64,000 nucleotides of DNA, from positions 124,001 through 188,000 of the IMG/VR virus record IMGVR_UViG_3300020154_000003; one strand, written 5' to 3'. Shown here piece after piece: positions 34,563-54,694 of this stretch (the stretch's first letter is position 1; the number at the start of each line of letters is the position of its first letter). The position numbers and the translations under genes are program-made. The notes below the pieces were generated by a model, which worked only from the letters and a program-made list of their open reading frames with translations, was not told where the DNA came from and ran no database searches.

Positions 34563-34970
34563 TTTGTTTCGTTGTTTATACTAAGTTAAACGGGAATTCT
34601 TAATTAAGGTTACAGTATATCCGCTTTTTCTTTGTAGCATTTTTCAGCATACTGAATTGCCTCAAAGTCATCGTTGGCCACAACCAGCCCATGAGTTTCC
34701 CCGAAACTTGTTAGCCAAAAGTATAAGGTTGCCTTTACCTTTCCAACCAGACAAGGGTAAATTCCTGCTTCAGTTGGCACAGGTTCAGCGATACTGAAAA
34801 TATCGTATCCGTTTTCACTCTCCAATTTGCCGTGCAGGTAAGTGAAAGGAATGCGTTTGGAAGGGAAGTCGAAACGTTGCTTTCCTAAAACTGATTCGGG
34901 GTTGATCCTAAGTGTTTCCATATCTCATTAAACGTCAAATAGTTAATTAAGGTTACACAAAAGTAATAAA

Positions 34971-34993
34971 AAAAAGGGACTTTTTTAAGTCCC
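34971..34993 (-). terminator. intrinsic terminator; GGGAC/GTCCC family also near 38363, 38825, 39171 and 40581
   Basis: Hairpin adjacent to an A run on the + strand (U tail on the - strand). Confidence 0.7.
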
Positions 34994-34999
34994 GTATTT

Positions 35000-35884: not shown

Positions 35885-36471
35885 ATTTTTGGTTGTTTGT
35901 TATATCCTATTATACGTACTTAATTCAGAAAGGTTGCCTTAATTTAGAATATTTTTCTTAATTCCCTGCTAGGTACTGGCACGTATCCGGTGAATTCATA
36001 AACCTCCACTATCCTGCCAGCCGTATTGTATTTGACAAATAGCGACCTGTTTTGAGTGTATTCCCTTTTAATGAGTTCAAACACTTTTACGACTGCTAAT
36101 TGAGCACGGACTAAAGTATAGTCGGGATTGCCTAAAATATCGTTGACAGTTTTCATATTAGAATACATAACAGTTCAGTTCATACTTTACTTTCATGCCA
36201 TAGACTTGAACGGCAAGGGCTTTCTTTGACTCTTTGCCATCTTTCAGAAGGGCAATTATATAGCGATTAGTTATTCCCTCAGAAGGTCTTTTTGGCCCTA
36301 CTGTGACCTTATTAAACCAGTCCGTTTCGTCAATGGTGAAACCTTTGGAGGTTGCAACGCGAACGGCCTCTGCCATTGCTGAGGTAAAAGAGTCGTGATA
36401 TAGTTGAAAGTTCATGTGAGTATTAACGTAGTTAATTAAGAAAGGTTGCACTAAATTAAGAAAAAAGCCCG

Positions 36472-36798
36472 TTAATTTACGGGCTGTTCATTTGCAATGC
36501 GAGTCAATTGCTTTGCGTATTTCATGATTTTCTTTTTGGCCATTGCCAGTTGCTTTGCAGTCATGAAACCCTTTTCAATATACCACTTTGCAAATTTAGT
36601 CATGATAAACGCATCCGTACCGTTGAAACCTACTCCATTGTTGTGAGCAGTCGAATCGGAATTCTTTTCGTCTTCCGTTTGACGTTCATAGATTTTCACT
36701 ACCGAACGCATAACAAATTTGTCATCGTTTTCGAGCAGCAATTTGATTTGTTCAACTTGCCAGACTCTTTTTTTGGTTGCTATGATCGTTGTTTCCAT
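36472..36798 (-). CDS. conserved phage hypothetical protein
   Basis: IYERQTEDEK...HNNGVGF..D...KYAKQL. Confidence 0.7.
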   Translation of the reverse strand: METTIIATKKRVWQVEQIKLLLENDDKFVMRSVVKIYERQTEDEKNSDSTAHNNGVGFNGTDAFIMTKFAKWYIEKGFMTAKQLAMAKKKIMKYAKQLTRIANEQPVN

Positions 36799-37311
36799 AC
36801 TGAGTTAAACGGACTTAATTAAGAAAGGTTGCGTTAATTAAGAAATATTTTTCCAGTACTGGTAAAAAAAATAAAAAGTAGGTTGGAGTACACTCTCTCG
36901 AAAACATTGACGTTTTCCACCCATCTTAACATATTGCAGGTTCGATAAGTATATTAACGGCAATACTTAATTAAGGTTGCGTAAAAGCTAAATTATTTTC
37001 GAATTATTTTGGAGGTCTGACAGACCAGTTCAGTTCCCCGTTGTGGATGTAGTAACCAAACTGTTTAAATTTATCCGGGCTGTTCAGTGTAACCCTGATA
37101 ATAAAATCATGTTTCTCCTTTTCGCTCCATTGTTGTGGCATTGTTTGGCTTTCCCTATGTTCCGGGAAGTCGCACCAAAGATTTACAAGGGTATGCATAA
37201 AATGGTCAGTGCTTACCACAAAGTTTGCAAAAGTTAAAATGTGTGCTTTCATATACTGAGTTAAACGGGTAAACTTAATTAAGGTTACATAAAAAGAAAA
37301 AAATCCCTGAT

Positions 37312-38181
37312 TTATTCAGGGACTGACATATAAACGTCTTCCATTATACTATGAGTGTAACCACGTCTAAGGGTATAATTTGGTACTTCATTCTTACCGA
37401 TTAGCACGGCTTTCCAAGTGATATTCCCCTCTGAATCTTTGTAAAGTTTCACGTCCATACCGTCAAAATAATTTGCAAGTTCTTGAGCGGGATTGTTAGT
37501 ACAAAACTCTTCAAAGAATGCGTAAAAGTCACAAAGGGTATTTCTGTTTTCCAAAGTATCGGGAATCATTTTTGCAGCCATACGGTAACCGTATCTATGG
37601 AGGTCAGCAATTTTGCGGAAACTCACAGACTTTTTATAATCTTCCCCGTATTGTCTTTCATCTTCATAGTTAGTATCGGGTGAAAATTGTTTCACCTTAT
37701 TCCAGTACTCAGATATTTGATCTTCCAAGTCATAGTCATTTGTCGGACGTTGTTTCGGTACGTTGCTTTCCAGCGTTGAACCAAACTGAGTATTCCCGCA
37801 TTCAATAGATTCTTGAATCATGTCTTGAGTCGTTAACCTCATTAGTTCAGCATTTGAATAGCGATAGTTACGACCTTGCAGCCTATTCCATACTCCGAGC
37901 GTATTGATATAATACCACATTGCGCCCATTGCAGCCATTTCGCCCCCTACATTCATTGCATAGTCCCCGCGAAAGTATTTGTTTGAATATTCATGACTAT
38001 GTTCAAACACGTCATGAAAAATTCCAGTACCACCCCAAAATGCATTGAATGACGAACCTGAATGGTTATTGTCATAGGTATCTTTGTGCGCTAAACCATA
38101 TTCACCAGTTGCATCGTCACAAAAGAACGTCAATTCGACTTTTTTAACTAACCGTTTCATATTCTTTGTTGTTGTGTTCAT
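37312..38181 (-). CDS. hypothetical protein, possible HD/HExxH-like metal site
   Basis: FHDVFEH...GGEMAAMGA. Confidence 0.7.
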   Translation of the reverse strand: MNTTTKNMKRLVKKVELTFFCDDATGEYGLAHKDTYDNNHSGSSFNAFWGGTGIFHDVFEHSHEYSNKYFRGDYAMNVGGEMAAMGAMWYYINTLGVWNRLQGRNYRYSNAELMRLTTQDMIQESIECGNTQFGSTLESNVPKQRPTNDYDLEDQISEYWNKVKQFSPDTNYEDERQYGEDYKKSVSFRKIADLHRYGYRMAAKMIPDTLENRNTLCDFYAFFEEFCTNNPAQELANYFDGMDVKLYKDSEGNITWKAVLIGKNEVPNYTLRRGYTHSIMEDVYMSVPE

Positions 38182-39188
38182 GAGTATATTAACGGACTTA
38201 ATTAAGAAAGGTTGCCTTAATTAAGATTTTTTTTGAATTATTTCACCAGTACTGGTAAAAAAAAGAGGGCGTGTTGGAGTATACTCGGTGCCGTTTTTAA
38301 GAAACGTTACAAGTATATTAACGGGCAAACCTTAATTAAGGTTACACAAAAGATGAAAAAAAGAGGGACTTTTTTTGTCCCTCCCTTTCGTGTTAACTGA
38401 TTGCACTTTCCGGGCATCCCTCTGCTTTCATTGCCATTTCCTTGGCAGCTTTCAGGGATTGAGCGGTGACCTTTAAAACCTTTGTCCCGTTGTCATGTTT
38501 CAATCTGAGTGCAAAGGTTGTCATTCTTAAGTGTCGAGGCAATTTCATGCGTTTTGTGGGTTACGTAAAAGATTCATTTCGATAACTTTTTCACGGCATT
38601 GTCTACAGCTAGGCAAACTTAATGCCTGCCCCATAAATGTGGGAACCAGATTCAAACTACCTTTACCACCGTTCCATAGTCCTTTCCCGCAAAGGGTAGA
38701 GCCGTGCTGGAATTGTGTCAATCCTTCCCGACTTGCGGGCATGTGAGTAAGATCGTTTAAGTTCGTTGTCATATGTATACTAACGGGCATCCTTAATTAA
38801 GGTTACACAAAAAGGATAAAAAAAAGGGACTTTTTTTCAAGTCCCCTAATTTTCAGGCTGTTAGCAGATGTGCCACTTTGAACTTTGTCACCGTGTCGTT
38901 GAAGTCGTCAGCGAGGTTGTTTTCCTCATAGGTACGTTTCAGTTCTGCCAGTACCTTGAGATTCGATGCACCTTTGGGCAGTCCCACCAGTCTCTTAAAT
39001 TGAGCCTTTACAGGGGCAGCATTTCTGGCGATAGGCATTCCGAATTTAATTTCGGTAATGATCGACATAAGGAGGACTTTTAGAGTGAATGAATTCATAT
39101 TGTTTTTTGTTTTGTTATATGAGTTATAACGGCATTCCTTAATTAAGGTTACACAAAACGAGAAAAAAAAGGGACTTTTTTCAGTCCC

Positions 39189-39551
39189 TTAAATTTTGAT
39201 CGCTTTGTTGGTTACATGTGGCTTATTCCATTTCCCTATGTGGATGTTATAGTAATAATTCGGGATATTACCATAGTCGCCATCGGTTGAAACCGTTCTG
39301 CTTTTTGCGCTGATTATTTCAGCGATTGACAAAAGGAATTCAAGATAAGGCTTTCCCGCATGATGTTCTTTTATGTACATCGGGATAGGATTGAGTTGCA
39401 TGTAATTTTCGGGAAACTCAAAAGGGCTTTCCATTACCGCGACCTCAATGGTCGAAAGGTGTTGGCGTGTTATGCTAAATTTCACATTCGGATATTTAGC
39501 TTTGATCTTTGCCCTCATTTCCTGAACGGTCTCGGTTGTGATATAACTCAT
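39189..39551 (-). CDS. LPD29-like protein
   Basis: R.KIK.KYP.VKFSI...H...YY.NIHIGKWNKP. Confidence 0.55.
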   Translation of the reverse strand: MSYITTETVQEMRAKIKAKYPNVKFSITRQHLSTIEVAVMESPFEFPENYMQLNPIPMYIKEHHAGKPYLEFLLSIAEIISAKSRTVSTDGDYGNIPNYYYNIHIGKWNKPHVTNKAIKI

Positions 39552-39729
39552 AACTTTAACGGTTATAAAGTGAAAGTAAGTAAAAACTGGTTAACACCAA
39601 AAAAACGAAGATGTTTATTATTATGCGTTTCATGAGTATATTAACGGGCAAACGTTAATTAAGGTTACAAAAAAAAATATTTTATTTTTTCGTGAATAAT
39701 GTAACCTTTGTGAATAGTTCACGTTAATA

Positions 39730-39813
39730 TACATACGAACGCTGACAAGCTAGTAGGAGAGCCGAAAAGAAGGAAAAGGAGAGAACGGTTTCTGCAGCCA
39801 TCCGTTCTTTTTT
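39730..39813 (+). ncRNA. candidate small RNA copy 1
   Basis: Promoter at 39701-39727, no ORF, terminal hairpin GAACGG/CCGTTC plus T run. Confidence 0.55.
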
Positions 39814-41091
39814 AAAAAAAAGAGAAACAAAAAAAGGGGATTATTCTCCCCTTGCTTCTTTGTCAAGTTGTTCTTTCAGGTCTTGTTCGTGCTGTTTTTC
39901 AGCCTCGATGTCCAAAAGTTCCTCAACTTGCTGCTCGATAATAAAATCCGGGATTTCGTCTTCCATTGCTTTTTATTTAAGTTGTGGGTATCTCCATAGA
40001 GTATCTTTCACCGTGCGGTTGTTAACTATGACTTTCGTTTCATCCATGATGCAGGAAAGTTCACAGTTCCCGAAGTAGGATGTTTGAGCGTTTTTCTTTG
40101 CTTGTTTCAAAGAATTGCCCCAACCTTCCCGGACTGAATAACCTGATTGTTTCAGGCCATTTTTTTCGCAAAGTACCCTTTCCATTGCATCAGCTAAAAA
40201 GAATTCGACCAATAGAAAGTAGCAGGCGTTTCGTGTTGTTGTGTGTCTCATGAGTATATTAACGGGGATTGTTAATTAAGGTTGCGTGAAAAGAAAAAAT
40301 ATTTTTTGTAACCTTTGTTGCATTGTTCCCGTTAACAATGCCAAACAACGAAAAACTATGAAATTTTATGGCTATGTTCCCACAAAAGAGGGGAAAGAAC
40401 CTTTAGGGACTGAAGGGCGCACAATGTTTGAACTTGAAACAGTTCCGGGCGCAATTCGAAAGATGAGACGGTATGCCAGTACTGTGAATTCTCCTAAACT
40501 TTCCGCTCCATCATTTAAGCTATTCAGCTATTCTAATTTTTACGATCAATCAACTTTTACTGAAATTATTTAAAAGGAAAGGGACTATTTTTTAGTCCTT
40601 TTTAGTCCCTTTTTTTGCCTTTACCCTTGCGTAATTTCCGCTACTCTTATAGTATGTTCCCACATACGTTAGGCCATTCACTGCCTTTATTGTGACTGCC
40701 TGTCGCTTGTCACCAAAGTTTGATCGCCATTCCCTGCCAAGTACCACTACTCCTAATTTGTCGCCTGTCCAAGTTGTGGCGTATGTCATCGGAGTTCCTT
40801 CAGTGATATACAGGAAATAATTCTCAGGCTTATCGTGCATGAATTCGTAGCACTCAACCAGACTGCGAAGATCGTTTGTAACAATGTCCGCATGAGGGAA
40901 TGTCGCACAGATTTCAGCAGGGATGCCATTGGTCTTGTGCAATGTACGGTACTCTAAAGATGCTGCATCGTATTCAGCGATTTTCATCTTGTAGATTGCG
41001 TAATGTTCAGCGTTCATATCGTGTTTGTTTTGTTGTTAAGTATATTAACGGACAATGTACGTAAAGGTTACATAAAATGTTATATTATTTT

Positions 41092-41196
41092 AGGACAATG
41101 TTCACCGTGCCAGTACTGGTATAGGACAATGTACGTGCTGGTTAATTAAGGATAGGACAATGTACGCTGGCAGGGCATGAGGGAAGGACAATGTAC
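41092..41196 (+). repeat. four AGGACAATGT(A/T)C repeats at an exact 31-bp period
   Basis: GG starts at 41093, 41124, 41155 and 41186; a fifth copy at 41050. Confidence 0.85.
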
Positions 41197-41259
41197 ATAA
41201 AATAAAAAAAGGGGGTTAACAACTCCCCCTTTTGAACACAAAACAACAAAACAACAATG

Positions 41260-41898
41260 CTAATTATTATGACCCCATTCACCGTCCCAATTCGGATTGA
41301 TGTGGGAGTTCTTTTTATCTGCGATCATTCGGTCGATGAAAAGTTTCTGTCCGGGATTCAATCCCTTGATGTCAACGCGACCGTTTTTAAATGCTTTCAC
41401 TGAAATCTTTTGAACTAGTTCACCTTTCTCATCCAGAATGTGAATATCCTTCAGGTCGTTACCTGCTGCCCGGAATTCTTTTGCAATGTCAGCAGCGATG
41501 GTAAAATCCGGGTCTTGTTTCTTCAGGATCACAAAGCGAAGGAAACCAAACAGGTTTGTATCCGCATAGTGAATGTCTGAGATGGTATAATGGTCGCCAG
41601 ACTTTCTGAAGTAATAGTGCCAAAACAGGCTGTTATTGTTCGCATACGCGAGAAACAGATTTTTGTTTCCATCGTAATTTTTCTTCAGCCACTGGTCGAA
41701 CCTGTCAGCATTCCACTGAAAAGATTTCGTAAAATCGAACAGGGAGCGACCAAAGAACCTGCTTTCCCTCGGATAATATCCGATATACGTGCTCACTTTG
41801 TTTTCTGTGATTGCTTTCACAGTATCCATCAGGGCATCCTCATCCAATAGATCAAGATTATCGGAGATGTACTTGAGTCTTTTCTGAATTGTATCCAT
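41260..41898 (-). CDS. hypothetical protein
   Basis: 212-aa ORF with its own promoter; VKAFKNGRVDIK. Confidence 0.7.
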   Translation of the reverse strand: MDTIQKRLKYISDNLDLLDEDALMDTVKAITENKVSTYIGYYPRESRFFGRSLFDFTKSFQWNADRFDQWLKKNYDGNKNLFLAYANNNSLFWHYYFRKSGDHYTISDIHYADTNLFGFLRFVILKKQDPDFTIAADIAKEFRAAGNDLKDIHILDEKGELVQKISVKAFKNGRVDIKGLNPGQKLFIDRMIADKKNSHINPNWDGEWGHNN

Positions 41899-42632
41899 TT
41901 TCTTTAGTTGTTTGTTGTTACTACGTTTAACGGAAACAGTTTGAAAAGGTTACATTATTCTTCAGTTATTTGCCCCAAAAGTTCAACCAAGTCAGCAGCC
42001 GTGAATAAATTTCTTCCAGTACCTTCCAGATCATAGCTGGAATTGTATGCAAAATCATCTTCTTCAGCATCTTCAAAATCCATGTTCCCTTCATTTTCAG
42101 TTGCCAGTACCTCCACAATTCCCTTATCGCTTACCCATGCACCAACGATTGACACGTTCTCATCTTTCTCAGCAGCGAAGGGATTATCAATCAGGATTTT
42201 CCCTAATTGTTTTACCTGCTTTATAATAGCTTCGCGGGCCTGATCTTCAATCCCCTGAAGTTGTTCGAGTAATACTATTGATAGCTTATCCATCGGATTA
42301 AAGATTTTTGTCTGAAACAATTTTTTGTGCTTCTTTGAGACTCATTTTCGGTTGCTCATCTTCCCCTGAGAGGTTGAATGCTTCTTCTTCAGTCACAATT
42401 GCTTTTTGTACTGCCGTATCCTGAATGTGGTCAATGAGATTGATGATTCCTTCCAGCGTATCCCATTCAGGTTTGGTGATTGTCTTCTTTGCCTGAAGGT
42501 TAACCAGTACTGATTTTTGTGCTTTCAGTAGGGTGAAGTCCAGTTTCATTAGAACTTCGAATGCGGGTGCTGTTGCCATTTTCTTTTGTTGTTTGTTTTG
42601 TATGTATACTAACGGCTGCTATCCGCAAAAGG

Positions 42633-43331
42633 TTACGCATTCACAAAAGATTTTACGGATTTGTTGTATTGTTTGAATTCTAAATTAAACTTGTCGAATT
42701 CTTTAACGTTCAAACCTCCGAGACCATTTGTGAATAAGTCCACATCTTTCACATAGAAAGATTTGTGTTTGAAATACCACACAACAAAATCGTATGCTTC
42801 TTTCAAAGTAGGGAAACTCATTCCAGCGTACCCACCGATTCCCATTCTGCCAGCTTCGAAACTGAATTGTATGGTTCTGTTCGGGTTCTGCCAGACTTCA
42901 TAAAAGGTTTTTTCCTTTGGAAGTCTTTCCCTACTCCATACGGGTTCGAAAGTTCCCGTTATGGTGAGGTTGTATTTTTTAATTAAGATGCTCTTTCTGA
43001 ATTCAGGGTATTTCATCCCTACTTCACAACGTTGGTTGCCTTTCATGTATTGTTCTGCGAACTCAATTGCAATGCCCAACATAATCGTATCGTGCATACG
43101 CGACCAATTCCAGCTACTAGCCAATTCATTTTCGCATTGAGGCGTTTCAGGAATGCCGTGAACGGCAGCGTGAGCGTATTTGTGAGGGATGCCTGCGAAT
43201 TCCAAAATTTCAATTGCAGCTTCATTCGCTCCGGGAATTTCAATGTATCTTTCCCGGTTTTTGATGGTGGAGAAAGTGATGCCCAACTTTTTGCATACTT
43301 CGAGCACCTTGTTTGTTAATTCCGTTTTCAT
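42633..43331 (-). CDS. hypothetical protein
   Basis: 232-aa ORF with its own promoter. Confidence 0.7.
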   Translation of the reverse strand: MKTELTNKVLEVCKKLGITFSTIKNRERYIEIPGANEAAIEILEFAGIPHKYAHAAVHGIPETPQCENELASSWNWSRMHDTIMLGIAIEFAEQYMKGNQRCEVGMKYPEFRKSILIKKYNLTITGTFEPVWSRERLPKEKTFYEVWQNPNRTIQFSFEAGRMGIGGYAGMSFPTLKEAYDFVVWYFKHKSFYVKDVDLFTNGLGGLNVKEFDKFNLEFKQYNKSVKSFVNA

Positions 43332-46300
43332 CGCTTTGTTGTTTTGTTGTTGCTATGTTTAACGGCTGCTATCCGCAAAGGTTACATTATTTCCGACTAA
43401 ATTTGAAAAAGGATAAAAATAATCGAATTGAACCTCAACAAAATCGGAAGTGAATGCCATAAAGGCCATCAGTTTATTTTTGTAATACACTGAAATTACC
43501 CAACCATTTGTCGAGCGAATTTCAGAACTTACCCTAGGATCAATGTTTTTCACATTCTGAATATCCAGCGTGTAAACACTATGTTTCACCTTTCCTTCGG
43601 TGAGTTTTACGTTACCTCTTTTGAGAGACTGGAAAATCTTTTCGACACGTTTGGGAGTAGTCATTTTGTGTGTTTGTTGTGTTGTACGTATATTAACGAA
43701 AAAACCCTGCAAAGGTTGCAAGGTTTTCGTTTTTTTCTTTTCACCTTTTAGCTTATCGCATGGTGAGTCACATTGCCATCGGGAGTCATAAGGGCATAGT
43801 CAATTTTGATTTGATTCCTACCCTTTGCCGTTTGTGGCCAAATTTCAGCACTTACTACCGAGTTCCCTTTTTCTTTCTGGTACTGGTTCTCTGCTGCGAT
43901 AATTCCTTTCACTTCTTTGAAAGTCATTGCACCGTAACAGGTCTGAGTGCTCAACACTTTTCCACCGTTGGAGAGGTTGATGTTTACTGCGAAGTTACAA
44001 GTTACTGAGCGTCCCATATCGTTTTGTTTTGTTGTTAATTAGTTAAACGTGAACAAAACGAAAAGGTTACGATAATCCGTGAATAAAATTGAATAATTCT
44101 TCCACCTGCAATTCCAAAATTATTTGTAAGGATAGTTCTGAGTCCTCATTCACGAAATCGCCTTGCCTATCTGTAATTGCATAGAAAGGATTATTTATAT
44201 CCTTAATTACACTTCCAAGTAGTACGTGCTTTTCGTATGGAATGTATTTTGTGCTGGCATAGAACTTTGTGACCAGTACTGGCAGATGTGCTGCTACCCG
44301 CTTTTTCCAGTCCTTAAACTTTTCGCGGGCATATCGCTTATATCTTGCGGTTGCCATTACCAGAAAAGTGATTTTGGCAGCTTTGCTTTTTCTCTAATCC
44401 AGTCCATTACTTGTTCAGAATAGTAATGCGTAGTCAACTCATTCAGAAATTGCGTGAGTGTTCTTTGCAGTTGTGGGTCACCGATAGCCACAGTTTCGCG
44501 TGTGAATTCTTTTGCGTTTGACTGGTTGGAAGACTTTCCATAGCCTGTTGAAGTATCCCAATCTTTACCGATAACGGTGATGGTCTTCTTTGTAATTTCA
44601 ACGGTGATAACACCACCTTTGCAGTACTCACCGATTTTGAATGTTTTCGTTGCCATTTAGTTTGTTGTTTGTGTTATACTATCTTTTAACGGCTGCTATG
44701 TGAAAAGGTTACATTCTTTTCAATTTATTTAGCAAACGCATATGTTCATCGATGTATCCTTTCTTTTTCCATTTGATAGGATCGTAACAGAATTGAGGAT
44801 CGAATACCCTTCCCGATTCCCGCTCGAATTCGTTAATTAAGGATAGCAGGCGTTTGACCGTTGGATTGCTTTTTGGAATTTCTTCACCCGTTTTGAGACT
44901 GACAAATTCAACTCCATAGCAGTTAACTACCCATTGGTACTTATCACATACTCGAACTATTTCACCAAGTATTGTATCTTCGATGTGAGTAGCAAGTTTG
45001 TGAAGTTTGTCGTATTCTTTTCGTAGCGTTCTCATAATGTTAATTAACGAACCAGTACTGGAAAGGTTACACTATATAACAAAAAAAAGGGAGAAACTTT
45101 CCCCCTTTAAACTAACCTGTATTTGTAGACAAGTTCTTTCGTGCTTTCCTTTTGCAGGGCTTCTGCGATAGCTTTGCAATAGTCCCGGAAAAACATTTGT
45201 CCACTGCTGAGTCTTTTCTTTTTACTCTTTCGGGCAATTTCATTTACCAAGGCATTGATTTGATGCGTTGGAAGATTCTGAATGTTTTCGACCAAATTTT
45301 CCATAGCTTTATGATTTGTTTTCGTTTCTTTTATTTTTTACGAATTCAGCCCAATACTTGTCTCTGGCCACATGTTCTTTGATGTCCTTACCAGTCATCC
45401 GGTGTGCCAAGGGTGCATCCCATGCGTCACCTATCGGAAGGTGAATAAGTTTCACAGGTTTGGTACTGAAAACTACGTAGGCTGCTTTTCCATCAGCGTG
45501 AGGGATGTAGATCGTTTCCCCTGCGAGTTCATCTTTGCTGTTTTTCTTTGCCCATTCGCGAATGCTATTCACGTAAGCCTCTTCTGCTTCTCTTGATGCT
45601 TTCAAGTTGCGAAAGTCGAATTTCGGTAGTTCGAATTCTTTTGGAGCGTTATAAACTTTTCCCATTGTTTTGTTAGTTTGTTTTGTGTTACTACATTTAA
45701 CGGGAAAGATTTGGTAAGGTTACGTAAAATGTAAATTATTTTCTTTTTTGTATTTCTCCCATTCCGCTATGACTCTATGTTCAGACTCAAACGGATAGCG
45801 GGCGCAAAGTGTGCTCATGAGGTCGCTGGCAAAATAGGCAGCGTTATAGTTTTGCTGAACAGTATACTTTTGGCGTTCATTGTGAATTAACCATTTGGCG
45901 AATTCCAGTAGTTCATTTTTCTTTTCCATCTACGTTAAATGTTTTTCTTGCAACGTTAATTAACTGTTCATCCGTCAATCGTTCTAACCTATGGAATTCA
46001 TTCGAGGTTGCTAAACTTGCATGGATACCACAGGAACATCTTACAAAAAATGCAAGTCCTTTAAGATCATTTCTTACCTGTTCAGGCTTTCTTGTACCAT
46101 AGGCAAGCGATTCCAATTGTATCATGAAGAACCTTTTGATATGACCCTCAATTAACTCCGAAGGAATTTTTTGGTCGTCAGCAATTGGCCTGCCCGGACA
46201 AGATGTATCGTATATTGGATACATTATTCTTTATCTTTGATTGATACCTCAGTTCTTTTATTCCATGTTCTGGAATATCTGAAACCTTTTGCAGATTCCA

Positions 46301-47178
46301 CAACCAGATCAACTTTCCCGGAAGGAGTGCTGATACCTGCTGAGGGAGCGACAACCACTTTCACATTTGTGGGAGTAAGGATGTCACCTACACTTAAATC
46401 TTTTACCAGTTTTTTCACGGCTCAATTGTTTTCTGATTTCTGAAAATAAACAAACTCTTTTATTTCATCCTCGAAGTCACGTTTCACGTCATGAAAGTTA
46501 GGATATTTGCAAGCATAGTATGCTTGAACTTCCTTTTGCTTTTCCTCGGATGAGGCACGATACCATTCCTTTGCATCACTCCAAGATATTGTTTCTGTTT
46601 CCATACCCATATAAACGAAAAAAAGTACTGTAGGGTTACAGTACTTTTCACATTTTTCAAACTTTTTTTAATCTTCGACTGTTACGTCATCCAGTTTCAG
46701 GAAGTCATAGGCATCGGAACCACGTTGGTGTGCTGCTTTTTCTGACCTTTCCTCTAAGCCTTGTATTTGAGCAATTATCCTTGGATACCCGAAACGAGGT
46801 ACGGTAATGTGACCGAACGCTCTACCTTCATCCACAAAGGCATCCGCATAGATGATTCCCTTTTCAGAACCGATCATATAATACTTGATATTCGGGCTGC
46901 TGAAATGGAGTTTCAGTTTTACCGTTTTGCCATTGACAATGCCTGACACTGAAAGATCATCATGGTCAATCAGTACCCGTATATCAATGCCAGTTGCAAT
47001 TGTTGCCAGTACTGACAGAATGAGGGCGATGTCATGCTTTTGATGTGATTGAACAATTTCCATAGTTTTTTGTTGTTTGGTGATATGAGTATAAACGGCA
47101 CTATTCACAAAAGGTTGCCAGAAATTTAAAATATATTTTCTTGAATATTGTAACCTTTTCAAACGGCATCCGTTAATA

Positions 47179-47260
47179 TACATACGAACGCTAACAAAGC
47201 AAGTAGGAGAGGGGAAACCAACCAAATTAGAGGACGGTTATTGCAGGGGTCTGTCTGTTT
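47179..47260 (+). ncRNA. candidate small RNA copy 2
   Basis: Promoter at 47150-47176; ATACGAA..AGTAGGAGAG..ACGGTTATTGCAGGGGTCTGTC. Confidence 0.55.
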
Positions 47261-47284
47261 ACTATTGATGGCAAATATAGGAGG

Positions 47285-47845
47285 TTACAATTCGAACTCC
47301 AAAGTTTCTCCGTTCATTCTGATTTCAACCAACTTGTCAACGCAAAACTGTCTGAACGTATTGGTTTTCAAATTTTTGCGAATGATGTTTTTCGCGATTG
47401 TCAAAGGTGCGCTATTCACTTCCCGGTATCTTACAGGAACCAGCACTTCTTTTGAGATACGATTTCCGTAAACGTAAACTCTGCCAGTTTCATTGTGAAC
47501 GCGAACATTCGGGAAAACTTGGGTATACGTACCCTGCTGCGCCCGCGACTGATTTGATTCATTCTCAATGGCATACAAAAGGGCTATCCGGGCTTGCTCC
47601 GCATATTGAGCCACAGAACCAAATTCGAGACCAGCAATATTGCTAGGGTCGCTAAGGAATTTTCTGTCAGCTTCTTTTGCGTTTGCATAGGAGGCACCAA
47701 CGTTTACCACGTAGTTTGAAATTTCACCCTGATTGTTGCAGTAGTTTTTTACCGATACAAAGGTAGGGGTTTTTTGACCTGCCAAATTCGCATACAATTT
47801 GAGTTGAGCGATAACTTCGGAAGGTGATAAGAGGACAAGTATCAT
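47285..47845 (-). CDS. conserved phage hypothetical protein
   Basis: FVSVKNY.N..GE.SNYVVNVG.SY...Y..VNS.PLTIAK. Confidence 0.7.
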   Translation of the reverse strand: MILVLLSPSEVIAQLKLYANLAGQKTPTFVSVKNYCNNQGEISNYVVNVGASYANAKEADRKFLSDPSNIAGLEFGSVAQYAEQARIALLYAIENESNQSRAQQGTYTQVFPNVRVHNETGRVYVYGNRISKEVLVPVRYREVNSAPLTIAKNIIRKNLKTNTFRQFCVDKLVEIRMNGETLEFEL

Positions 47846-48282
47846 GGTTCGTTTTGTGTTTGGTTATATGTATTATACGGCTGCTTCAATAAAAGGTTGC
47901 GATAATATAGGGTTATTTTTCAATTAATCCATATATCCATGCTCAATTGAAAAGTCACTTTCCTTTGCACCCTCATTCTCAATTAAGTGTGCCTTAACGC
48001 GATCAAAGTAGGCGTAGTTAGTCATATTACCCTGAACAATTCCCTCAGTAATTGTCCTTCCATTTTGTCTTAAGCGCATACCGATGCAGCAAGTTCCTTG
48101 GTCACCCATTTCAGATATGACCTCCTTTGCGATTTGTTTCAGTGTTATTGCGTCCATGTTTTTTTGTGTTTGTTAATATAGAGTTAAACGGCCATGCCCG
48201 CAAAAGGTTGCGTAATTAAGGATAAAAAAAGTTAAATTATTTTCACAAATAATGTAACCTTTGTGAATAGTTCCCGTTAATA

Positions 48283-48356
48283 TACATACGAATCAAGTAG
48301 GAGAGCCGAAAAAAAGGAAATTAGAAAACGGTTATTGCAGGGGTCTGTCTTGTTTA
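48283..48356 (+). ncRNA. candidate small RNA copy 3
   Basis: Promoter at 48254-48280; same conserved blocks as copies 1 and 2. Confidence 0.55.
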
Positions 48357-48474
48357 ACTTATGCCAGTACTGGAAAAAATATTTAAACTATTTTCGTGAA
48401 AAACGTAACCTTTGTACAAAAGTCAACGTATAAAGAGCATACGCAAACAACAAACAAAACAAACTTTACTAGCT

Positions 48475-49278
48475 ATGCGACACGACTTTAATTTTTCCTA
48501 CATTGGCGGTGTTAACCTGACTGCGAAAATTGCACACGGTAAAGAGTACGGTATTGATACTTATACTCTATATTTTGCTCCTTATAAATTGAGCGGGCAA
48601 AACGTGTGCGCAAAGGCAACAAAGGAATGTATAATGGGTTGCCTTAACACGTCCGGGCGGGTTAAAATGGACAAAAAGAACATTATTGTCAATGCCCGCA
48701 CACAAAGGACTATTGCCTTTTACGAACAAAGGGAAAAATTTATGACTTTAATGATTCATGAAATTTCCCTTGCAAAAAAGCGTTCGGAAAAAAAGGGGAC
48801 TATCTTTGCAGTCCGTTTAAACGGTACTTCCGACCTGTCCCCGGAAATTTTCAAAGCGTTCGGGCAAAATATTCTCGAATTGTTCCCGGATGTTCAGTTT
48901 TACGATTACACAAAGGTACTGAACCGCAAAAAGTTGGTTGAAAAATACCCAAATTACGACCTGACTTTTTCTTATACGGGCTACAATTGGTCTGAATGCC
49001 AGCAAGCGTTATCGGACAATGTTCGGGTCGCTGTAGTGTTTGACGTGAAAAGAGGTAAAGCCCTGCCTAAAACTTTCAACGGGTACAAAGTTATTGACGG
49101 TGATTTGAATGATTACCGTCCAATGGATGAAAAGAATGTGATTGTAGGCTTACGGTGGAAAGATATTGCAAACCGTGAAAATAATACCGCGATCAAAAAT
49201 AGTCCCTTCGTGGTAAAGGTAACGACTGAAAATGTCGTTACCACTTCGGACAATGTACATGAAACACAAACAGTTTAA
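48475..49278 (+). CDS. GP88-family phage protein
   Basis: NVC..AT..C...CL..SGR, VRLNGTSD, QFYDYTK, NYDLTFS, IDGD..D.R. Confidence 0.7.
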   Translation: MRHDFNFSYIGGVNLTAKIAHGKEYGIDTYTLYFAPYKLSGQNVCAKATKECIMGCLNTSGRVKMDKKNIIVNARTQRTIAFYEQREKFMTLMIHEISLAKKRSEKKGTIFAVRLNGTSDLSPEIFKAFGQNILELFPDVQFYDYTKVLNRKKLVEKYPNYDLTFSYTGYNWSECQQALSDNVRVAVVFDVKRGKALPKTFNGYKVIDGDLNDYRPMDEKNVIVGLRWKDIANRENNTAIKNSPFVVKVTTENVVTTSDNVHETQTV

Positions 49279-50601
49279 ATAGTACTGGCATGAAAACTAC
49301 AAACCTACTCAGAAAATACAATAGGCTTGAGGACAATAACGATCACAATGAAGCTGCTGCCTTGCTGGTTAATAACTTTGGTACGGATGACGAAAAGCAA
49401 ACCATGAAGGAAATTATTGCCCGTGCTGAAAAACAAAACGGCATGACCAGTGAGGATATAAAATTGAGGTATGAAATATCTCAAAAGTACTATCCGATAA
49501 TCACAGGCAAAGCCTATCCAATACAAAAGAAGTAACCCGGACAATGTTCACCCTTAATTAATAAAGCTATGGACACTCAAAAAATTGATAACCTTATCCA
49601 TCAATTGGATAGTATTGCACGAAGTTACGATGGCTATGAGTATGGCCTGCCTACTCATCATGACCATACGATGATTGAAATGGAGAATGCTATTAAACAT
49701 GCTTTCCCGGACAATGTACAGACCAGTACTGACAAGTCAGAAAAGATGCGGGCGGTATTGGAAAAATTGGTAGCTTCGTTCCCGGAAATGGATACCGATG
49801 AACCAATAGCTGGCAGCGATGCCGTTGACATCCTTTGCGGGATGTGGGATGAAATTAAAGACGCTATAAAATAACCTCCTATGAAAAATCCGATTATCAT
49901 AATTAAGGTTGGTAAAACTGTAATTGGAGATACTAGGGATTCACGTACAACTAATGATGCTAAGAGAAAATTTCTCAAGCAATACTCAGGGTACAATCCT
50001 AAATCAGTTACTGCGACTATTAAATATAACTAATATGGCAAAGAAAAATAAAATTGTCATCACTGACAATAAGGAAATGATAGCAGAGTTCATGAACTTA
50101 ATTAACAAACCCATCTACGAAAAGAAGTCCCCGATGTTCTTTAAGGATGAGGGAGGTTATTACGTAACCAAACTGACTGCCAGTAATGAGCCTGCTGACC
50201 CTAACAAAATGTATGAATTCGGTACGCTCACAGAGGTGCCAGTACCAAATAAAAGGACTGCCATCCAATACGCAAAACAATTCGGTCGCACTGCAATATT
50301 TGGTTAGAATAATGTAACCTTTACGTACAATGTACGTTAGATAACATATGAACAAACGCATCTTAGAATTCGCAAAGCTTCCCTTGGAGGAAAGAATCAA
50401 AGTGATCATGCTCTTCGGAGTATCCCTGATGACTATCCCTCATTGTGGCCTGATTGGTTCACTCTTTACCCTTGGCACTGAGTACGTTGAAATGATGGCT
50501 GATACCCGTACTGGTGAGATAGTTCACCTTGGCATCGCGGATTACAGCGACCTGAATAAGTACGCTGCTCACATCGACCTCGATATTTAATAAACTGTAC
50601 A

Positions 50602-51267
50602 ATGTACGTCAAGTATAACGATTTCAAAGATCATTGTGGATTACTGCCTGACTGGTACTCTGAAGAGATACATGATCAAATAAACAAATACCTGCCTGAA
50701 AGTAAGCTGCAGGCCGTTAAGTATCTGAAGGACACCTCCAAAGAATTCGAGACTGAAACCACGCATGGCTTAGGGCTGAAGGAATGTAAAGACATCGTTG
50801 ACTCGATGGCCACAGTACTGGCAAAGCTTGAGTCTATTCGAGAGGCATATGATCATGAACTTTCTTCATTTATTGAGCATTCATTAATTAAGAATACCAA
50901 TACCGCCCTGTCTCTAAAAGAATTCAAACAAAAAGCAAAAATCATTCTCCCAAACTGGTATACTGAATCTTTCCATCAAAAGGTCGTTAACCTGATGGTC
51001 AATGAACAGAAACTCAATGCCTGCAAATTGATCTGCGATACCTCATCCAGCTATGGAACCCGCCACATCTATGATCTGAAGTGGGCAAAGATTGAAATCG
51101 TTGACGTACTCAACGATATGATGAGCAAAATCAATAAAGATGAACTGTCTGGCAAAATTATATCCTTAATTGAGGATGGAGCCTTCCGCACCAGTATTTT
51201 AAAAGAAGTACTGGAATTCGTCCCAAAAGCGGAAATGCTTAAAATAGTTGAAAAATATTCACCATAA
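50602..51267 (+). CDS. protein with two ribosomal L7/L12 C-terminal-like repeats
   Basis: KLQAVKYLKD...GLGLKECKDIVD and KLNACKLICD...DLKWAK; each unit preceded by LPxWYxExxH. Confidence 0.55.
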   Translation: MYVKYNDFKDHCGLLPDWYSEEIHDQINKYLPESKLQAVKYLKDTSKEFETETTHGLGLKECKDIVDSMATVLAKLESIREAYDHELSSFIEHSLIKNTNTALSLKEFKQKAKIILPNWYTESFHQKVVNLMVNEQKLNACKLICDTSSSYGTRHIYDLKWAKIEIVDVLNDMMSKINKDELSGKIISLIEDGAFRTSILKEVLEFVPKAEMLKIVEKYSP

Positions 51268-51355
51268 TTCGAAACAATTTTCTTAACTTTCGCAACCTTT
51301 ACGTACAATGTACGTTAGTATACATAAAAGAAAATAACTTTAACTAACCACTCTT

Positions 51356-51919
51356 ATGAAATCCAGCAAAGTTGTCATCCTTGAGATCAATGCAATTTAC
51401 AAAGCTTTCAAGCCTGCGATCACGAAGTACGTGAATCTCAAGATCAGGGATAAGATGATTGCTGAAGAACTCATCAATGACGTGTTCGTTAAAGTTCACA
51501 CATCTCTCCGCACCTACGATTCGAAGAAAGCACAATTTAATACTTGGATATTCAACATCGCCAAGAATGTGCTGATCGACCACTTCAGAAAGAAGTCGCT
51601 CGAAACCACCTCTCTGGAAGTTTCCAAACAGGATGACTCTGAAGACACAATGTCTGAGACTCTGCCCGTGGCTACCCCGGATCGGAACCCCCTTGAATCC
51701 ATGATCAGCGATGAAACAATGTACAATGTACAAACCGCTATGGGCCACCTCAATGAGACTCAACGTGAAATGCTCACAATGTACGCTCTGGATAACCTGA
51801 CCTACGAAGAGATCGCAGCCATGCTCAACATGCCTATGGGTACTGTCAAAGGCACGATCTTTAACGCTCGTACCAGACTGAAAGAAATCCTTGGCAACCG
51901 TATACCAGTACTGGCATGA
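51356..51919 (+). CDS. ECF-type RNA polymerase sigma factor
   Basis: Region 2 AEELINDVFVKV...FNTWIFNIAKNVLIDHFRK; region 4 LTYEEIAAMLNMPMGTVKGTIFNARTRLK. Confidence 0.93.
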   Translation: MKSSKVVILEINAIYKAFKPAITKYVNLKIRDKMIAEELINDVFVKVHTSLRTYDSKKAQFNTWIFNIAKNVLIDHFRKKSLETTSLEVSKQDDSEDTMSETLPVATPDRNPLESMISDETMYNVQTAMGHLNETQREMLTMYALDNLTYEEIAAMLNMPMGTVKGTIFNARTRLKEILGNRIPVLA

Positions 51920-54694
51920 ATAATATAGCACAACCTGAAGACATGTTGAAGTGTAGCGATTGTAAGACAATCTACGATCCTCTGCTCAACAAAAGATGTC
52001 CCTGCTGTGGGAATAACCAGCGATTTCTTAATAGCGTTATTGAAGGGCTGGATGATGAGTCCAACTTCATTGGCGAGGATGATGACCATTAATTAAGGAA
52101 ACCATGTTACAAGCATTCTTAGCACAAACCGCACAAGATTACGATCTGCCAGTACATATCGTGCAACAGATTTGGGAGAAGTATGAAGGTACTGGATTGT
52201 TTTACGATAAATTGGAAGAATATCTCAAAAGTCGTAACCTTTGTAACTAGTTCTCGTTAACATACTCATATGGACTCACCCAAAGAAATTGTAGTAAGCG
52301 TCAAGACGAAACACACCTACAAGGTAGGGGAAGACCGTCTGGAACTCGACACACCTCTGACTGTCGATATGAAGAAATATAAAAAGACAGGGGAAAATAA
52401 CCACTTCATCTTCTATACCAGAAAGTCTTCCAAATGAATAAGCATCTCATCAACACGGGAACCCCGAAGTCAGCCCAACAAGCTTATAACAAACTTGCAA
52501 GCTTTCTTCATAAGAATTCTCAAGGGATCAATGATCCTGACACAGCCTTCCTGAAGCACCAGAAAGTATTATCAGTACTGGTTGGGAGGTACACGCCCGC
52601 TATCGATATGATGATCAGGGTCTGGTATAACGTGGAAGACTTCGTGGCTGATGGCGAACCTATGGATCAGGTATGGGCTGACATCGAAGACATGTGCAAT
52701 TAAACCAGTACTGGATATGAATAAGAAAGATATAAAAGTAGCTTGCTGGCTCAAGAATGGTACTGAATGGTATTATCCGGTAAAGACTATCGACTTGAGC
52801 GAATACGATCACGTTCAACTCCTAATCAAGGATGACCATTCAGGTGACATTTACATTGCTTGGAATGGTGATTCTGATGCTCAGAAACATGCCACAGGTA
52901 GACTCTTCAAATCAAAATAAACCAGTACTGGTATGACATCATTATCCGAACAACAACTCAATGACGTTTTGGAACATCTCAAAGAAAAACTTGAGGTAAA
53001 AGTCAAGACCAAAAGAGACGAAGGTTATCTCGCAGTAAGGGTTGAACTCTATTTGGATGGCGAAGTCATCGCTGCTGATGAGGACTCAGCCAGAGTGGAT
53101 TACTAAATTAAGGATCGGACAATGTACAAGACACCCACAATAGTCGAACAATTGGATCGAATAGGAGAGGATATATTGCGAGTACTGGCCGAAGAGAAGA
53201 CCCCTATGACTGTCTTTCAACTACACGTCTTGAGAGATAAGGAAAAATGCGATCTCTCATCCTATGGCTGGTCATTCGCCCTCGATAGACTCGAAAGAAA
53301 ACATCTGGTAGAATTCGTATCACCATGCCACTGGCAACTCAAAGATCAATCCCGCACAATGTACATAAGAGAACTCGAAGATTTATTGGATAAAAGAATA
53401 ACCCCCGACTAATGAAATATTTCAGGATCACCAGCAAAAAAACCAGTACTGGTGAAGTTCACTATTACATCGAAGCAAAAAGGAAATGGTATCACTTCTG
53501 GAAACTGCAGGGTGTATATGCAACCCATAAGATCGCTGCAGGAGTACTGGAGAAGCTGCTGGCTCAACCCCTTAATTAAGTAAACTGTACAATGTACGAT
53601 GAATAAGAACGTCAAAATCTATAAGCGAGACGAAATCCAAAAGGTCTATCATCAACACGCTTACCATTGTGGTTCCGTGCTCTATTCCAATGATGGCTAT
53701 ACGTGGCAGTCAGTACCGATGGATTCCGGGAAATGGGATATTCACAAATGGTCATTCGCCTTCATTGAACGGCCAAAAACCAGTACCGTGACATCGCTGC
53801 AGAGATTCCAGAATTATGTCTATAAGAATATCTGTGGGGCATATACCCCGGAGAAGCGACTGAAATCAATCGAAACATTGTACAGTAAAATTAATGGAAA
53901 TTGATCCTGAATTCATGAACAAGTTAATACTTTTGACGTATAATTGATCACATATGAACTCTCCAATCATTTCAGTTAAACCAGTACGAGGCAGCAAAGG
54001 AAAGCTTGAAGTCTTCCCCCAACACCTCTTCGTAAAGAATTGGGTCTTCAATGAAGACGAAAAGGATGAGGCAGCACTCGCCCATTACATCGCTGCAGTA
54101 GCTGAAAAGAATGGTATGTCAGCAAATGAAGTATACCAAATATTCCCTGCCATGCTCCGTATGCTCAGAAGCAATATCGATTGGGCTAACCCCAATAAGA
54201 TCACTCAAGCTGATCTCGATAAGGCAAATGAAAAAGGAATGATGTCCAAATAAACCAGTACTGGATAATGACAACAACCATCGAGAAACTCAGAGACCTG
54301 ACCGTGGAGCAACTACTCATCCTGTCAAACGAACTTTGTCAAACGACAGTACCTGAAGACGCTCTTATCCGGGAAGTGATCAAAGATACCCAACTAGACA
54401 CACTAACTCCGGGTCTGGCTTTCATTGGCTTGGCAGGCCATCTACATGTGGAAATGGCTGAACGTCTTAAACTCTTGACCAGTACTGGACAAATATCTTC
54501 CCCGGATGATACCTTAGAAAGATTGAACCCGAAAGGAAAAATGATCCTCTAATCAGTAATTATGAATATGGAATTCCGATTCGTCCTCATGGTGCCTTGC
54601 CCTAATTGCCATATCCAAATAAGCTGCATGGCCAGTACTTGCACCCATTGCAAAACCAAAGTGAGCAATCACAATTAAAAACCAGTACTGGACA

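What the first reader, a model, noticed from the sequence alone, without database searches (positions are those of the whole stretch)
39701..48356. Three-copy family of promoter-driven small non-coding RNAs
Seen: at 39730, 47179 and 48283 a consensus promoter is followed by ATACATACGAA...AGTAGGAGAG...purine-rich linker...ACGGTT(A/T)(T/C)TGCAG. The ACGG pairs with CCGT (copy 1) or CTGT (copies 2 and 3) around a conserved TGCAG loop, followed by T-rich sequence; there is no ATG-led ORF. Each copy is divergent from a minus-strand promoter. Inference: an undescribed ~75-85 nt phage sRNA family, perhaps a protein sponge (GGA/SD-like motifs) or an anti-defence RNA.
Basis: partly seen in the sequence, partly recalled or inferred. 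Interest (0 to 1): 0.72.

Follow-up and report, generated by a model that had tools for sequence, protein, structure and literature searches.

The report
Multi-copy small RNA of jumbo phages
Three promoter-driven, ORF-less blocks of about 80 bases in this 366-kb soil phage belong to an undescribed small-RNA family, kept in 3-4 copies in at least three related jumbo phages, with compensatory base changes that point to a folded RNA whose job is still unknown.

Summary
Window 39731-39813, 47180-47260 and 48284-48356 (+) are three copies of one element, and a covariance model finds no others in the 366-kb genome.

The promoter in front is not a sigma-70 consensus. It is the phage's own ECF-type motif (GYAACC-N16-CGT), seen about 40 times in this block. 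It almost always sits at a fixed distance before an ATG. The phage encodes an ECF sigma at 51356-51919.

The element is not in Rfam, GenBank phages or 185,000 prokaryote genomes. It recurs 3-4 times in two other ~365-kb phages and in about 12 metagenome contigs.

Two tiny helices covary: P1 is 91-97% paired with changes on both sides at all three pairs, and P2 is paired in 28 of 28 members with three pair types. Spacing varies by non-multiples of three, so it is not coding. G-U pairs favour the + strand.

Best reading: an independent small RNA gene with a 5' stem-loop, an exposed GGAGAG tract, a mini-hairpin and a variable 3' hairpin. It probably acts in trans as a stoichiometric binder or decoy.

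No transcript evidence could be obtained. Predicted thermodynamic stability is weak, and no target or partner was found.

The parts
39701..39724 (+). ECF-type phage promoter of copy 1 (GTAACC ... CGT)
   Evidence: Same motif as about 40 promoters of this block. AAC-N16-CGT spacing read.
39731..39813 (+). Small RNA copy 1. P0 39734-36/39753-55; P1 39741-43/39748-50; invariant AGTAGGAGAG 39752-61; P2 39762-63/39772-73; 3' hairpin 39782-88/39802-08, then a T run.
   Evidence: (86 bits). The 5' end is inferred as the 7th nt after CGT. The 3' end is inferred from the hairpin plus T6.
39834..39853 (.). Bidirectional terminator-like hairpin between copy 1 and the convergent minus-strand genes
47150..47173 (+). 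ECF-type phage promoter of copy 2
47180..47260 (+). Small RNA copy 2. P0 47183-85/47203-05; P1 47190-92/47198-200; AGTAGGAGAG 47202-11; P2 of the GG/CC type 47212-13/47222-23; weak 3' hairpin 47232-37/47251-56.
   Evidence: (84 bits). The 3' end is uncertain.
48254..48277 (+). ECF-type phage promoter of copy 3
48284..48356 (+). Small RNA copy 3, the short form without P1. P0 48287-89/48297-99 closes a 7-nt loop; AGTAGGAGAG 48296-305; P2 48306-07/48316-17; weak 3' hairpin 48328-31/48345-48.
   Evidence: (68 bits). It is 95% identical to a G001 copy. The 3' end is uncertain; the next promoter starts at 48405.
39644..39668 (-). Divergent minus-strand promoter next to copy 1
47095..47118 (-). Divergent minus-strand promoter next to copy 2
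48188..48211 (-). Divergent minus-strand promoter next to copy 3
51356..51919 (+). Phage ECF-type sigma factor gene (187 aa). It is the likely reader of these promoters and lies behind one of them (51292).
   Evidence: Sigma70_r2 and Sigma70_r4_2 are above cut-off, and phrog_1740 matches. The link to the promoter motif is inferred.

Best explanation
The three blocks are genes for a small non-coding RNA.

How it is made (inferred). A phage-specific ECF-type promoter (AAC-N16-CGT), probably read by the phage's own ECF sigma, starts transcription about 7 nt after CGT. The product is a 75-85 nt RNA that ends at a 3' hairpin with a U-rich tract or just before the next promoter.

Fold. The RNA has four parts in order:
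- a 5'-terminal stem-loop: P0 (UAC/GUA), extended in most members by a covarying 3-4 bp hairpin P1;
- an exposed, almost invariant purine tract, (A)GUAGGAGAG;
- a 2-bp covarying mini-hairpin P2 (SS-GAnnnnA-SS);
- an A/G-rich linker and a more variable 3' domain, usually ACGGUUAUUGCAG inside a weak hairpin.

Likely action (inferred). It is made from 3-4 separately promoted copies in the promoter-dense early/middle block. It most likely acts in trans and stoichiometrically. The unpaired GGAGAG tract, held between the two small clamps, would bind and titrate a conserved host or phage factor: an RNA-binding protein, a nuclease, or a pyrimidine-rich RNA such as the 16S 3' end.

What is shown and what is not. 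Shown: repetition, conservation across phages, covariation, lack of coding potential and cassette autonomy. Inferred: transcription, the RNA ends, the sigma dependence and the decoy mechanism.
For: Promoter and cassette.
- The promoter motif is the one that sits at a fixed distance before an ATG in about 36 of about 40 cases in this block. The ATG lies 10-12 nt after CGT (leaderless) or 24-45 nt after it. The three copies are among the few with no ORF for 94-197 nt.
- The phage encodes an ECF sigma inside the block.

Distribution.
- G000 has exactly 3 copies. G001 has 4 and G002 has 3-4; both are complete ~365-kb relatives.
- About 12 further metagenome contigs carry it, always behind the same promoter type.
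- None was found in 185,579 prokaryote species genomes, in GenBank phages or in Rfam.

Conservation. The core is 95% identical between G000 copy 3 and a G001 copy. Genes shared by those genomes align at only 64-76%.

Covariation.
- P1 is 91-97% paired, with double-sided changes at all three pairs, and 0 of 500 shuffles reach the observed score.
- P2 is paired in 28 of 28 members, as CC/GG x23, GG/CC x3 and GC/GC x2. Pairing falls to 0-46% when the partner is slid.
- Many G-U pairs in the 3' hairpin only work on the + strand.

Not coding. The distance from TACGAA to AGTAGG takes values of 11, 18, 20, 21, 22 and 23 nt. The P2 loop is 7 or 8 nt. The few ATG or GTG micro-ORFs use two different frames over the conserved 13-mer.

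Autonomy.
- The element occurs co-oriented, convergent or divergent to its neighbours. Where the next gene is co-oriented, that gene usually has its own promoter.
- In close relatives the same promoter slot holds an ordinary leader plus ATG instead (loose ends at 47185 and 48279).
Against: - No transcript evidence. The metatranscriptome-labelled runs behave like DNA. The one true RNA run holds only a 209-nt contig inside gene 47285-47845.
- The helices are very short. RNAalifold predicts no consensus structure.
- Single-sequence folds are no more stable than shuffles, with z-scores of -0.3 to +1.1.
- Mean predicted pair probabilities are low: P0 0.24, P1 0.41, P2 0.16 and the 3' hairpin 0.06.
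- P0 never covaries, so it is untested.
- The 3' domain is not uniform. At least three module types exist, and only copy 1 has a convincing terminator.
- No binding partner or target was found.
- GGAG is altered in a few divergent members (GUGAGAG, GGUAGAG, GUAAGAGAG). A strict Shine-Dalgarno mimic therefore does not fit all copies.
Confidence: 0.5

Rival explanations
1. It is a base-pairing riboregulator. The RNA is real, but it works by antisense pairing to host or phage mRNAs. The seed would be the conserved UUAUUGCAG sequence of the 3' hairpin loop or the GGAGAG tract.
For: The architecture fits: a 5' stem-loop, then a single-stranded conserved stretch, then a 3' hairpin. That is the usual layout of trans-acting bacterial sRNAs (established knowledge). 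The 13-mer ACGGUUAUUGCAG is invariant in most members from different phages.
Against: Complements of the 13-mer and of the purine tract occur in G000 and G001 only at chance frequency, and not at orthologous places. The 13-mer complement is in 31 of 201 Bacteroidota genomes, so it does not lie in a universal host RNA. The 3' module is replaced by other modules in several members while the 5' module stays. Three to four separately promoted copies suggest a dosage need rather than catalytic regulation.
Confidence: 0.2
2. It is an R-loop or primer RNA of replication origins. The promoter would fire a purine-rich transcript that stays hybridised to the template and primes DNA synthesis, as at T4 ori(uvsY)/ori(34), ColE1 RNA II or the T7 primary origin.
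For: There is a strong promoter directly followed by a 35-40 nt tract that is about 90% purine on the RNA-like strand. Each genome has several copies near one genome end: in G001 they lie 9-20 kb from the terminal repeat. The promoters are arranged divergently.
Against: Cumulative GC-skew extremes do not coincide with the copies. In G000 the maximum is at 148.7 kb and the copies are at 163.7-172.3 kb. In G001 the minimum is at 162.6 kb and the copies are at 9-20 kb. No conserved AT-rich unwinding element follows the block. The orientation of the copies is not fixed relative to their neighbours. Covarying hairpins and base-specific conservation are not needed for a simple R-loop.
Confidence: 0.08
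3. It is a cis-acting promoter-proximal element, either a put-like antiterminator or a leader/attenuator. The nascent RNA would modify the transcribing polymerase or control read-through into downstream DNA.
For: It starts at +1 of an early-type promoter and occurs several times per genome, like putL and putR of HK022 (established knowledge). Copy 3 and several relatives lie upstream of co-oriented genes.
Against: Copies 1 and 2, and at least three relatives, face convergent genes. Copy 1 is followed by two terminators. Where the next gene is co-oriented, it usually has its own promoter 40-110 nt further on. Downstream genes differ between loci: GP88 in some and an unrelated 275-287 aa protein in others.
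Confidence: 0.07
4. It is not an RNA gene. The blocks would act as DNA sites for a protein bound next to the promoter, or they are decayed remains of leaderless protein genes kept by recombination between copies.
For: The ACG of UACGAA sits exactly where leaderless genes of this block have ATG, and ATGAAC is a common start there. That hints at descent from a leaderless gene cassette. There is no transcript evidence, and thermodynamic support is weak.
Against: Compensatory changes keep complementarity while the sequence changes in P1 and P2. A protein-bound duplex site would conserve sequence instead. G-U pairs make the fold strand-specific. The core is conserved far above the flanking genes across genomes that are only 64-76% identical, which argues against decay.
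Confidence: 0.05

Closest known systems
Phage-encoded trans-acting small RNAs with their own promoter and intrinsic terminator (the general class)
   Same: A self-contained promoter-RNA-terminator cassette of about 80 nt with no ORF. It has a 5' stem-loop, an exposed conserved stretch and a 3' hairpin, and it sits among early genes.
   Different: It has no sequence or Rfam relation to any described family. It is present in 3-4 diverged copies per genome. It is driven by an ECF-type phage promoter. No target is known.
CsrB/RsmZ-type protein-sponge RNAs
   Same: It is purine-rich with GGA-containing motifs, and high dosage is implied by the several copies.
   Different: Only one GGA is near-invariant, and it is not in a hairpin loop. 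The second 'GGA' is half of a covarying helix. No CsrA was found in the phages or in the Bacteroides control genome.
HK022 putL/putR antitermination RNAs
   Same: Several copies per genome, each starting right at an early promoter, with small stem-loops.
   Different: Many copies face convergent genes or terminators. Downstream genes carry their own promoters. There is no sequence or structural similarity.
R-loop primer transcripts of origins (T4 ori(uvsY)/ori(34), ColE1 RNA II)
   Same: A promoter is followed by a purine-rich transcript, with several sites per genome.
   Different: No skew or unwinding-element signature is present. The covarying hairpins and the base-specific conservation are unexplained by this model.
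RNA anti-CRISPRs (Racr, solitary repeat mimics) and pseudo-ToxI antitoxin mimics
   Same: These are phage-borne small non-coding units that act as stoichiometric decoys early in infection.
   Different: No CRISPR-repeat family matches the element. There is no tandem array. The host and its defence systems are unknown.

Membership tests
Any Rfam 15 family | Score at or above the family's gathering threshold | tested here: not met
   Only tRNAs pass in the window. E-value mode over the three copies gives only weak chance hits. Five relatives' loci give none.
Independent small RNA gene (generic) | Own promoter of a type shown to be used elsewhere in the genome | tested here: met
   The motif occurs 40 times in the window against 4.3 expected. 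It lies at a fixed distance before an ATG in about 36 of about 40 cases. Promoter activity itself is inferred.
Independent small RNA gene (generic) | No conserved reading frame | tested here: met
   Spacings vary by non-multiples of three. The micro-ORFs use two different frames.
Independent small RNA gene (generic) | Conserved secondary structure supported by covariation | tested here: met
   P1 and P2 covary. P0 is invariant, and the 3' hairpin is weak and mostly changes on one side.
Independent small RNA gene (generic) | Discrete transcript with defined ends | tested here: inconclusive
   Public runs give no usable RNA coverage. Only copy 1 has a clear hairpin plus T6.
CsrB/RsmZ-type sponge | Multiple GGA motifs presented in hairpin loops | tested here: not met
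   There is one near-invariant GGA in a single-stranded tract. The second is the 3' arm of P2 and changes to CC or GC.
CsrB/RsmZ-type sponge | A CsrA/RsmA partner in the system | tested here: not met
   PF02599 is absent from G000, G001, G002 and the B. thetaiotaomicron control. The true host genome is unknown.
HK022 put-like antiterminator | Lies upstream of, and is co-transcribed with, a terminator-containing operon | tested here: not met
   Copies 1 and 2 and several relatives are convergent with their neighbours. Co-oriented downstream genes have their own promoter.
Type III antitoxin RNA (ToxI-like) | Tandem array of repeats next to an endoribonuclease toxin gene | tested here: not met
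   There is no tandem array at or near the copies. The neighbours have no such domain.
Type I antitoxin RNA | Overlaps or faces a small hydrophobic toxin ORF | tested here: not met
   The 41-aa ORF facing copy 1 is highly acidic, not hydrophobic. Copy 2 faces a 186-aa gene.
RNA anti-CRISPR (Racr) | Resembles the CRISPR repeat of the host's system | not testable with these tools
   The host is unknown. No Rfam CRISPR-DR model matches inside the element.
Origin R-loop primer RNA | Coincides with a replication start | tested here: inconclusive
   GC-skew extremes lie elsewhere. Skew in this genome largely follows gene orientation, so it is a weak test.

The most novel reading that the evidence does not exclude
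The RNA is the first RNA-based host-takeover or anti-defence factor of Bacteroidota-type jumbo phages. It would be an abundant decoy made from 3-4 genes by a phage ECF sigma. Its clamped GGAGAG tract would mimic a Shine-Dalgarno or nuclease-target sequence. That would titrate either the normally sequestered 16S anti-SD end or a host RNA-targeting defence or turnover enzyme, reprogramming translation or protecting early phage transcripts.
Probability: 0.15. Interest if true: 0.85.

Novelty: new member of a known kind. Interest (0 to 1): 0.6.

Why it matters
Non-coding RNAs of jumbo phages are almost unexplored, and none is described for soil phages with Bacteroidota-like (Shine-Dalgarno-poor) gene starts. 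This family has several features that point to a function needing dosage and contact with a conserved partner:
- it is conserved more strongly than the surrounding proteins;
- it is kept in several separately promoted copies;
- it sits in the early/middle takeover block.

It also comes with a clean regulatory frame: a phage ECF sigma and about 40 matching promoters, including many leaderless genes. That makes it directly testable in a heterologous host. If it proves to be a decoy for ribosomes or for an RNA-targeting defence, it would add an RNA layer to phage takeover in a phylum whose translation initiation is unusual.

Tried and rejected
- Rfam, in gathering and E-value modes, on the window and on relatives: nothing.
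- RNAalifold on MAFFT alignments: no consensus structure. The helices had to be named by eye and then counted.
- Sigma-70 promoter scan: hits at chance level.
- Coding readings: ATG, GTG, ATT or ACG-led micro-ORFs use inconsistent frames and lengths.
- Targets by complementarity inside G000 and G001: chance level and not orthologous.
- Universal host RNA target: the 13-mer complement is in only 31 of 201 Bacteroidota genomes.
- Pairing with the second ORF-less unit at 38.3 kb: no better than shuffles.
- Phage-encoded partner proteins: no RRM, CsrA or S21 gene. There is no constant neighbouring gene; GP88 is next to some copies only.
- Type I or type III toxin-antitoxin readings: rejected.
- Long-range helix AGCCG/CGGUU, which RNAfold often predicts: rejected. 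The GG and GC variants of the 5' side are compensated locally in P2, not at CGGUU.
- Sarcin-ricin-loop resemblance (AGUAGGAGAG against AGUACGAGAG, recalled from memory): the 3' strand needed for that motif is absent, so it was treated as chance.
- Stop-codon recoding, prompted by a CTA-anticodon tRNA: no clear signal.
- Public read data: uninformative for small RNAs.
- Loose gapped patterns in the viral and metagenome collections gave mostly coding false positives. These were filtered out by the upstream promoter and TACGAA.

Full report
WHERE WE ARE. The window is bases 124001-188000 of a 366,038-bp virus record rated complete, so this is a jumbo phage. It has no close relative in GenBank phages. 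Shine-Dalgarno-like motifs precede only 28 of 317 long ORFs. Leaders are short and A/C-rich, or absent. The nearest phage relatives of its sigma factor include crAss-like phages, at under 30% identity. A Bacteroidota-type host is therefore likely, but this is an inference.

THE OBSERVATION. BLAST of copy 1 against the whole genome returns the three copies plus one promoter-only hit. A covariance model built from relatives (R1) scores them at 86, 84 and 68 bits and finds no fourth copy. No ATG lies inside the conserved block. Each copy is back-to-back with a minus-strand promoter.

THE PROMOTER. It is not a sigma-70 consensus. Sigma-70-like sites in 39.5-48.7 kb are at chance level, 24 against 22.1 expected.
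- The repeated motif is GYAACCTT-N13/14-(C)CGTTAATATAC. The octamer alone occurs 40 times in the window against 4.3 expected. Genome-wide, the sites that carry the full motif cluster at 158.6-212 kb.
- AAC-N16-CGT is the signature of ECF-sigma promoters (established knowledge).
- The phage encodes a two-domain ECF-type sigma at window 51356-51919, itself behind such a promoter, and a second sigma at about 300.5 kb.
- Of about 40 such promoters in the block, about 36 are followed by an ATG-led ORF at one of two set distances. These are 10-12 nt after CGT (leaderless) or 24-45 nt after it.
- The three copies have no such ORF for 94-197 nt. One further unit, at 38345 on the minus strand, is also ORF-less.
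- The start site is inferred to lie about 7 nt after CGT, at 39731, 47180 and 48284.
- The ACG of the conserved UACGAA sits exactly where leaderless genes have ATG.

RELATIVES. Pattern scans found the element in the following places.
- G001 is a 362.6-kb phage with terminal repeats. It has four copies, at 8.9, 15.0, 16.2 and 20.4 kb.
- G002 is a 371.5-kb phage with three to four copies.
- About 12 distinct JGI metagenome contigs carry it, always behind the same promoter type.
- Hits in gut metagenomes and in 185,579 prokaryote species genomes were coding false positives.
- G001 is colinear with G000 in reverse orientation. The promoter-rich block with the RNAs lies 9-30 kb from G001's physical end.
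- Shared genes align at 64-76% identity, yet copy 3 is 95% identical to a G001 copy.
- Positional orthologues can carry different sequence types. The G001 copy upstream of the GP88 gene is a divergent variant, which suggests exchange between copies.

ANATOMY.
- UACGAA near the 5' end can pair, as UAC, with the GUA of AGUAGG. This helix, P0, is 97.5% paired but invariant, so it is untested.
- Inside P0, most members have a 3-4 bp hairpin, P1, whose sequence changes freely. Arm pairs seen are GCU/AGC, ACC/GGU, CCA/UGG, AGGG/CCCU, CCUU/AAGG, CCU/AGG and GCA/UGC. It stays 91-97% paired, with double-sided changes at all three pairs and 0 of 500 shuffles reaching the observed score.
- Short forms, including copy 3, replace P1 with UCA or UUA.
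- Next comes the near-invariant AGUAGGAGAG.
- Then comes P2: two bases that always pair with two bases 7-8 nt downstream. The types are CC/GG x23, GG/CC x3 and GC/GC x2, and 28 of 28 members are paired. Pairing drops to 0-46% when the partner is slid.
- After an A/G-rich linker, most members have ACGGUUAUUGCAG. Its ACGG can pair with a downstream CYGU around a 13-nt loop. This 3' hairpin is 75-78% paired, with mostly one-sided changes and many G-U pairs.
- Several members instead carry other 3' modules, for example ones ending in AAAUCCAUCU or containing GAGAAUUWUUCAGAG. The 5' module is therefore the constant part.

NOT CODING, NOT DUPLEX DNA. The distance from TACGAA to AGTAGG takes values of 11, 18, 20, 21, 22 and 23 nt. 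P2 loops are 7 or 8 nt, and linkers vary by 1-2 nt. The occasional ATG or GTG micro-ORFs read the conserved 13-mer in two different frames. Complementarity-preserving changes and G-U pairs point to a folded + strand. A protein-bound duplex site would not behave this way.

WEAK POINTS.
- RNAalifold sees no consensus structure.
- Single-sequence folds are no more stable than shuffles.
- Mean predicted pair probabilities are low: P0 0.24, P1 0.41, P2 0.16 and the 3' hairpin 0.06.
- Only copy 1 has a convincing terminator: 7 bp plus T6, followed by a second, bidirectional hairpin.
- Public runs gave no transcript evidence. Three 'metatranscriptomic' runs look like DNA. The one true RNA run holds a single contig inside gene 47285-47845.
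- Those DNA-like runs do show one useful thing. In close relatives the same promoter slots are followed by an ordinary leader plus ATG, or by a copy 3 with a P1 insert. The RNA therefore occupies a gene-equivalent cassette slot.

CONTEXT. The units occur co-oriented, convergent or divergent to their neighbours. Where the next gene is co-oriented, it usually has its own promoter. Neighbouring proteins are small and mostly of unknown function. A GP88-family protein follows copy 3 and some relatives, while an unrelated protein follows others. The 41-aa ORF facing copy 1 is strongly acidic.

MECHANISM. Several features fit a stoichiometric trans-acting RNA best: the copies are separately promoted, base-specific conservation of unpaired purines is strong, the units lie in the takeover block, and each cassette is autonomous. 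Under this reading the GGAGAG tract, held between P0/P1 and P2, binds a conserved factor. I put about 0.75 on 'independent small RNA gene family' and about 0.3 on the decoy step, giving 0.5 for the combined statement.

The alternatives were examined as follows.
- Antisense regulator: no targets in the phages, and no universal host RNA target.
- CsrA-type sponge: not met.
- Origin primer: no skew support.
- put-like cis element: orientation and downstream promoters argue against it.
- Toxin-antitoxin RNAs: not met.
- No phage RRM, CsrA or S21 gene is present.

NOVELTY. There is no Rfam family and no match in GenBank phages. A full-text search for the element's two invariant motifs found only unrelated papers, and two keyword searches on jumbo-phage promoters and phage-encoded small RNAs found nothing describing it. 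The family is a new member of the known kind 'phage-encoded small RNA', restricted so far to one clade of ~365-kb soil and sediment phages.

Noticed in passing
window 38216-38345 (-): This is a second kind of ORF-less unit behind the same promoter type. About 60 nt without an ATG end in a T8 run, followed directly by the next promoter. A 34-nt stretch of it is 100% identical in G001 (22186-22219), although the two genomes are otherwise 64-76% identical.
   Followed up: partly
window 34600-52300 (genome 158.6-212 kb): About 40 ECF-type promoters (GYAACC-N15-18-CGT) lie here, one per small gene. Many genes are leaderless, with the ATG at the 11th nt after CGT; the others have 24-45 nt A/C-rich leaders. 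Several promoters have a palindrome such as AACCTTAATTAAGGTT between the -35 and -10 boxes, which could be an operator.
   Followed up: partly
window 51356-51919 (+); genome 300529-300951 (-): There are two phage-encoded ECF-type sigma factors. The first sits inside the promoter-rich block behind its own promoter type, which suggests autoregulation.
   Followed up: partly
window 1412-1659 (+): A tRNA cluster includes a tRNA with anticodon CTA, an amber suppressor that ARAGORN labels Pyl. ORF-length statistics give no clear sign of TAG or TGA recoding.
   Followed up: partly
window 39735-39737, 47184-47186, 48288-48290: The ACG of the conserved UACGAA lies exactly where leaderless genes of the block have their ATG, and ATGAAC is a common gene start there. 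The RNA cassette may descend from a leaderless gene, or the shared bases may serve promoter escape.
   Followed up: no
window 39841-39966 (-): A 41-aa, extremely acidic ORF (rich in E and D) faces copy 1. It could be a small DNA-mimic or anti-restriction type protein.
   Followed up: no
window 39634 downward (-), behind promoter 39644-39668: A leaderless ATG opens a short hydrophobic reading frame (MKRIIINIFVFLVL...) before the annotated 120-aa LPD29-domain ORF at 39189-39551. The true gene start here is unclear.
   Followed up: no
window 47185 and 48279-48292 (relatives seen in public runs): In closely related phages the promoter slots of copies 2 and 3 are followed by ordinary leader-plus-ATG genes, or by a copy 3 carrying a P1 insert. 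This points to cassette exchange at promoter boundaries.
   Followed up: partly
L210:1480-1500: The 3' tail of one relative contains the palindrome AUCUACUGUAGAU, which loosely recalls the Cas12a repeat hairpin. It is a single case and probably just a terminator.
   Followed up: no
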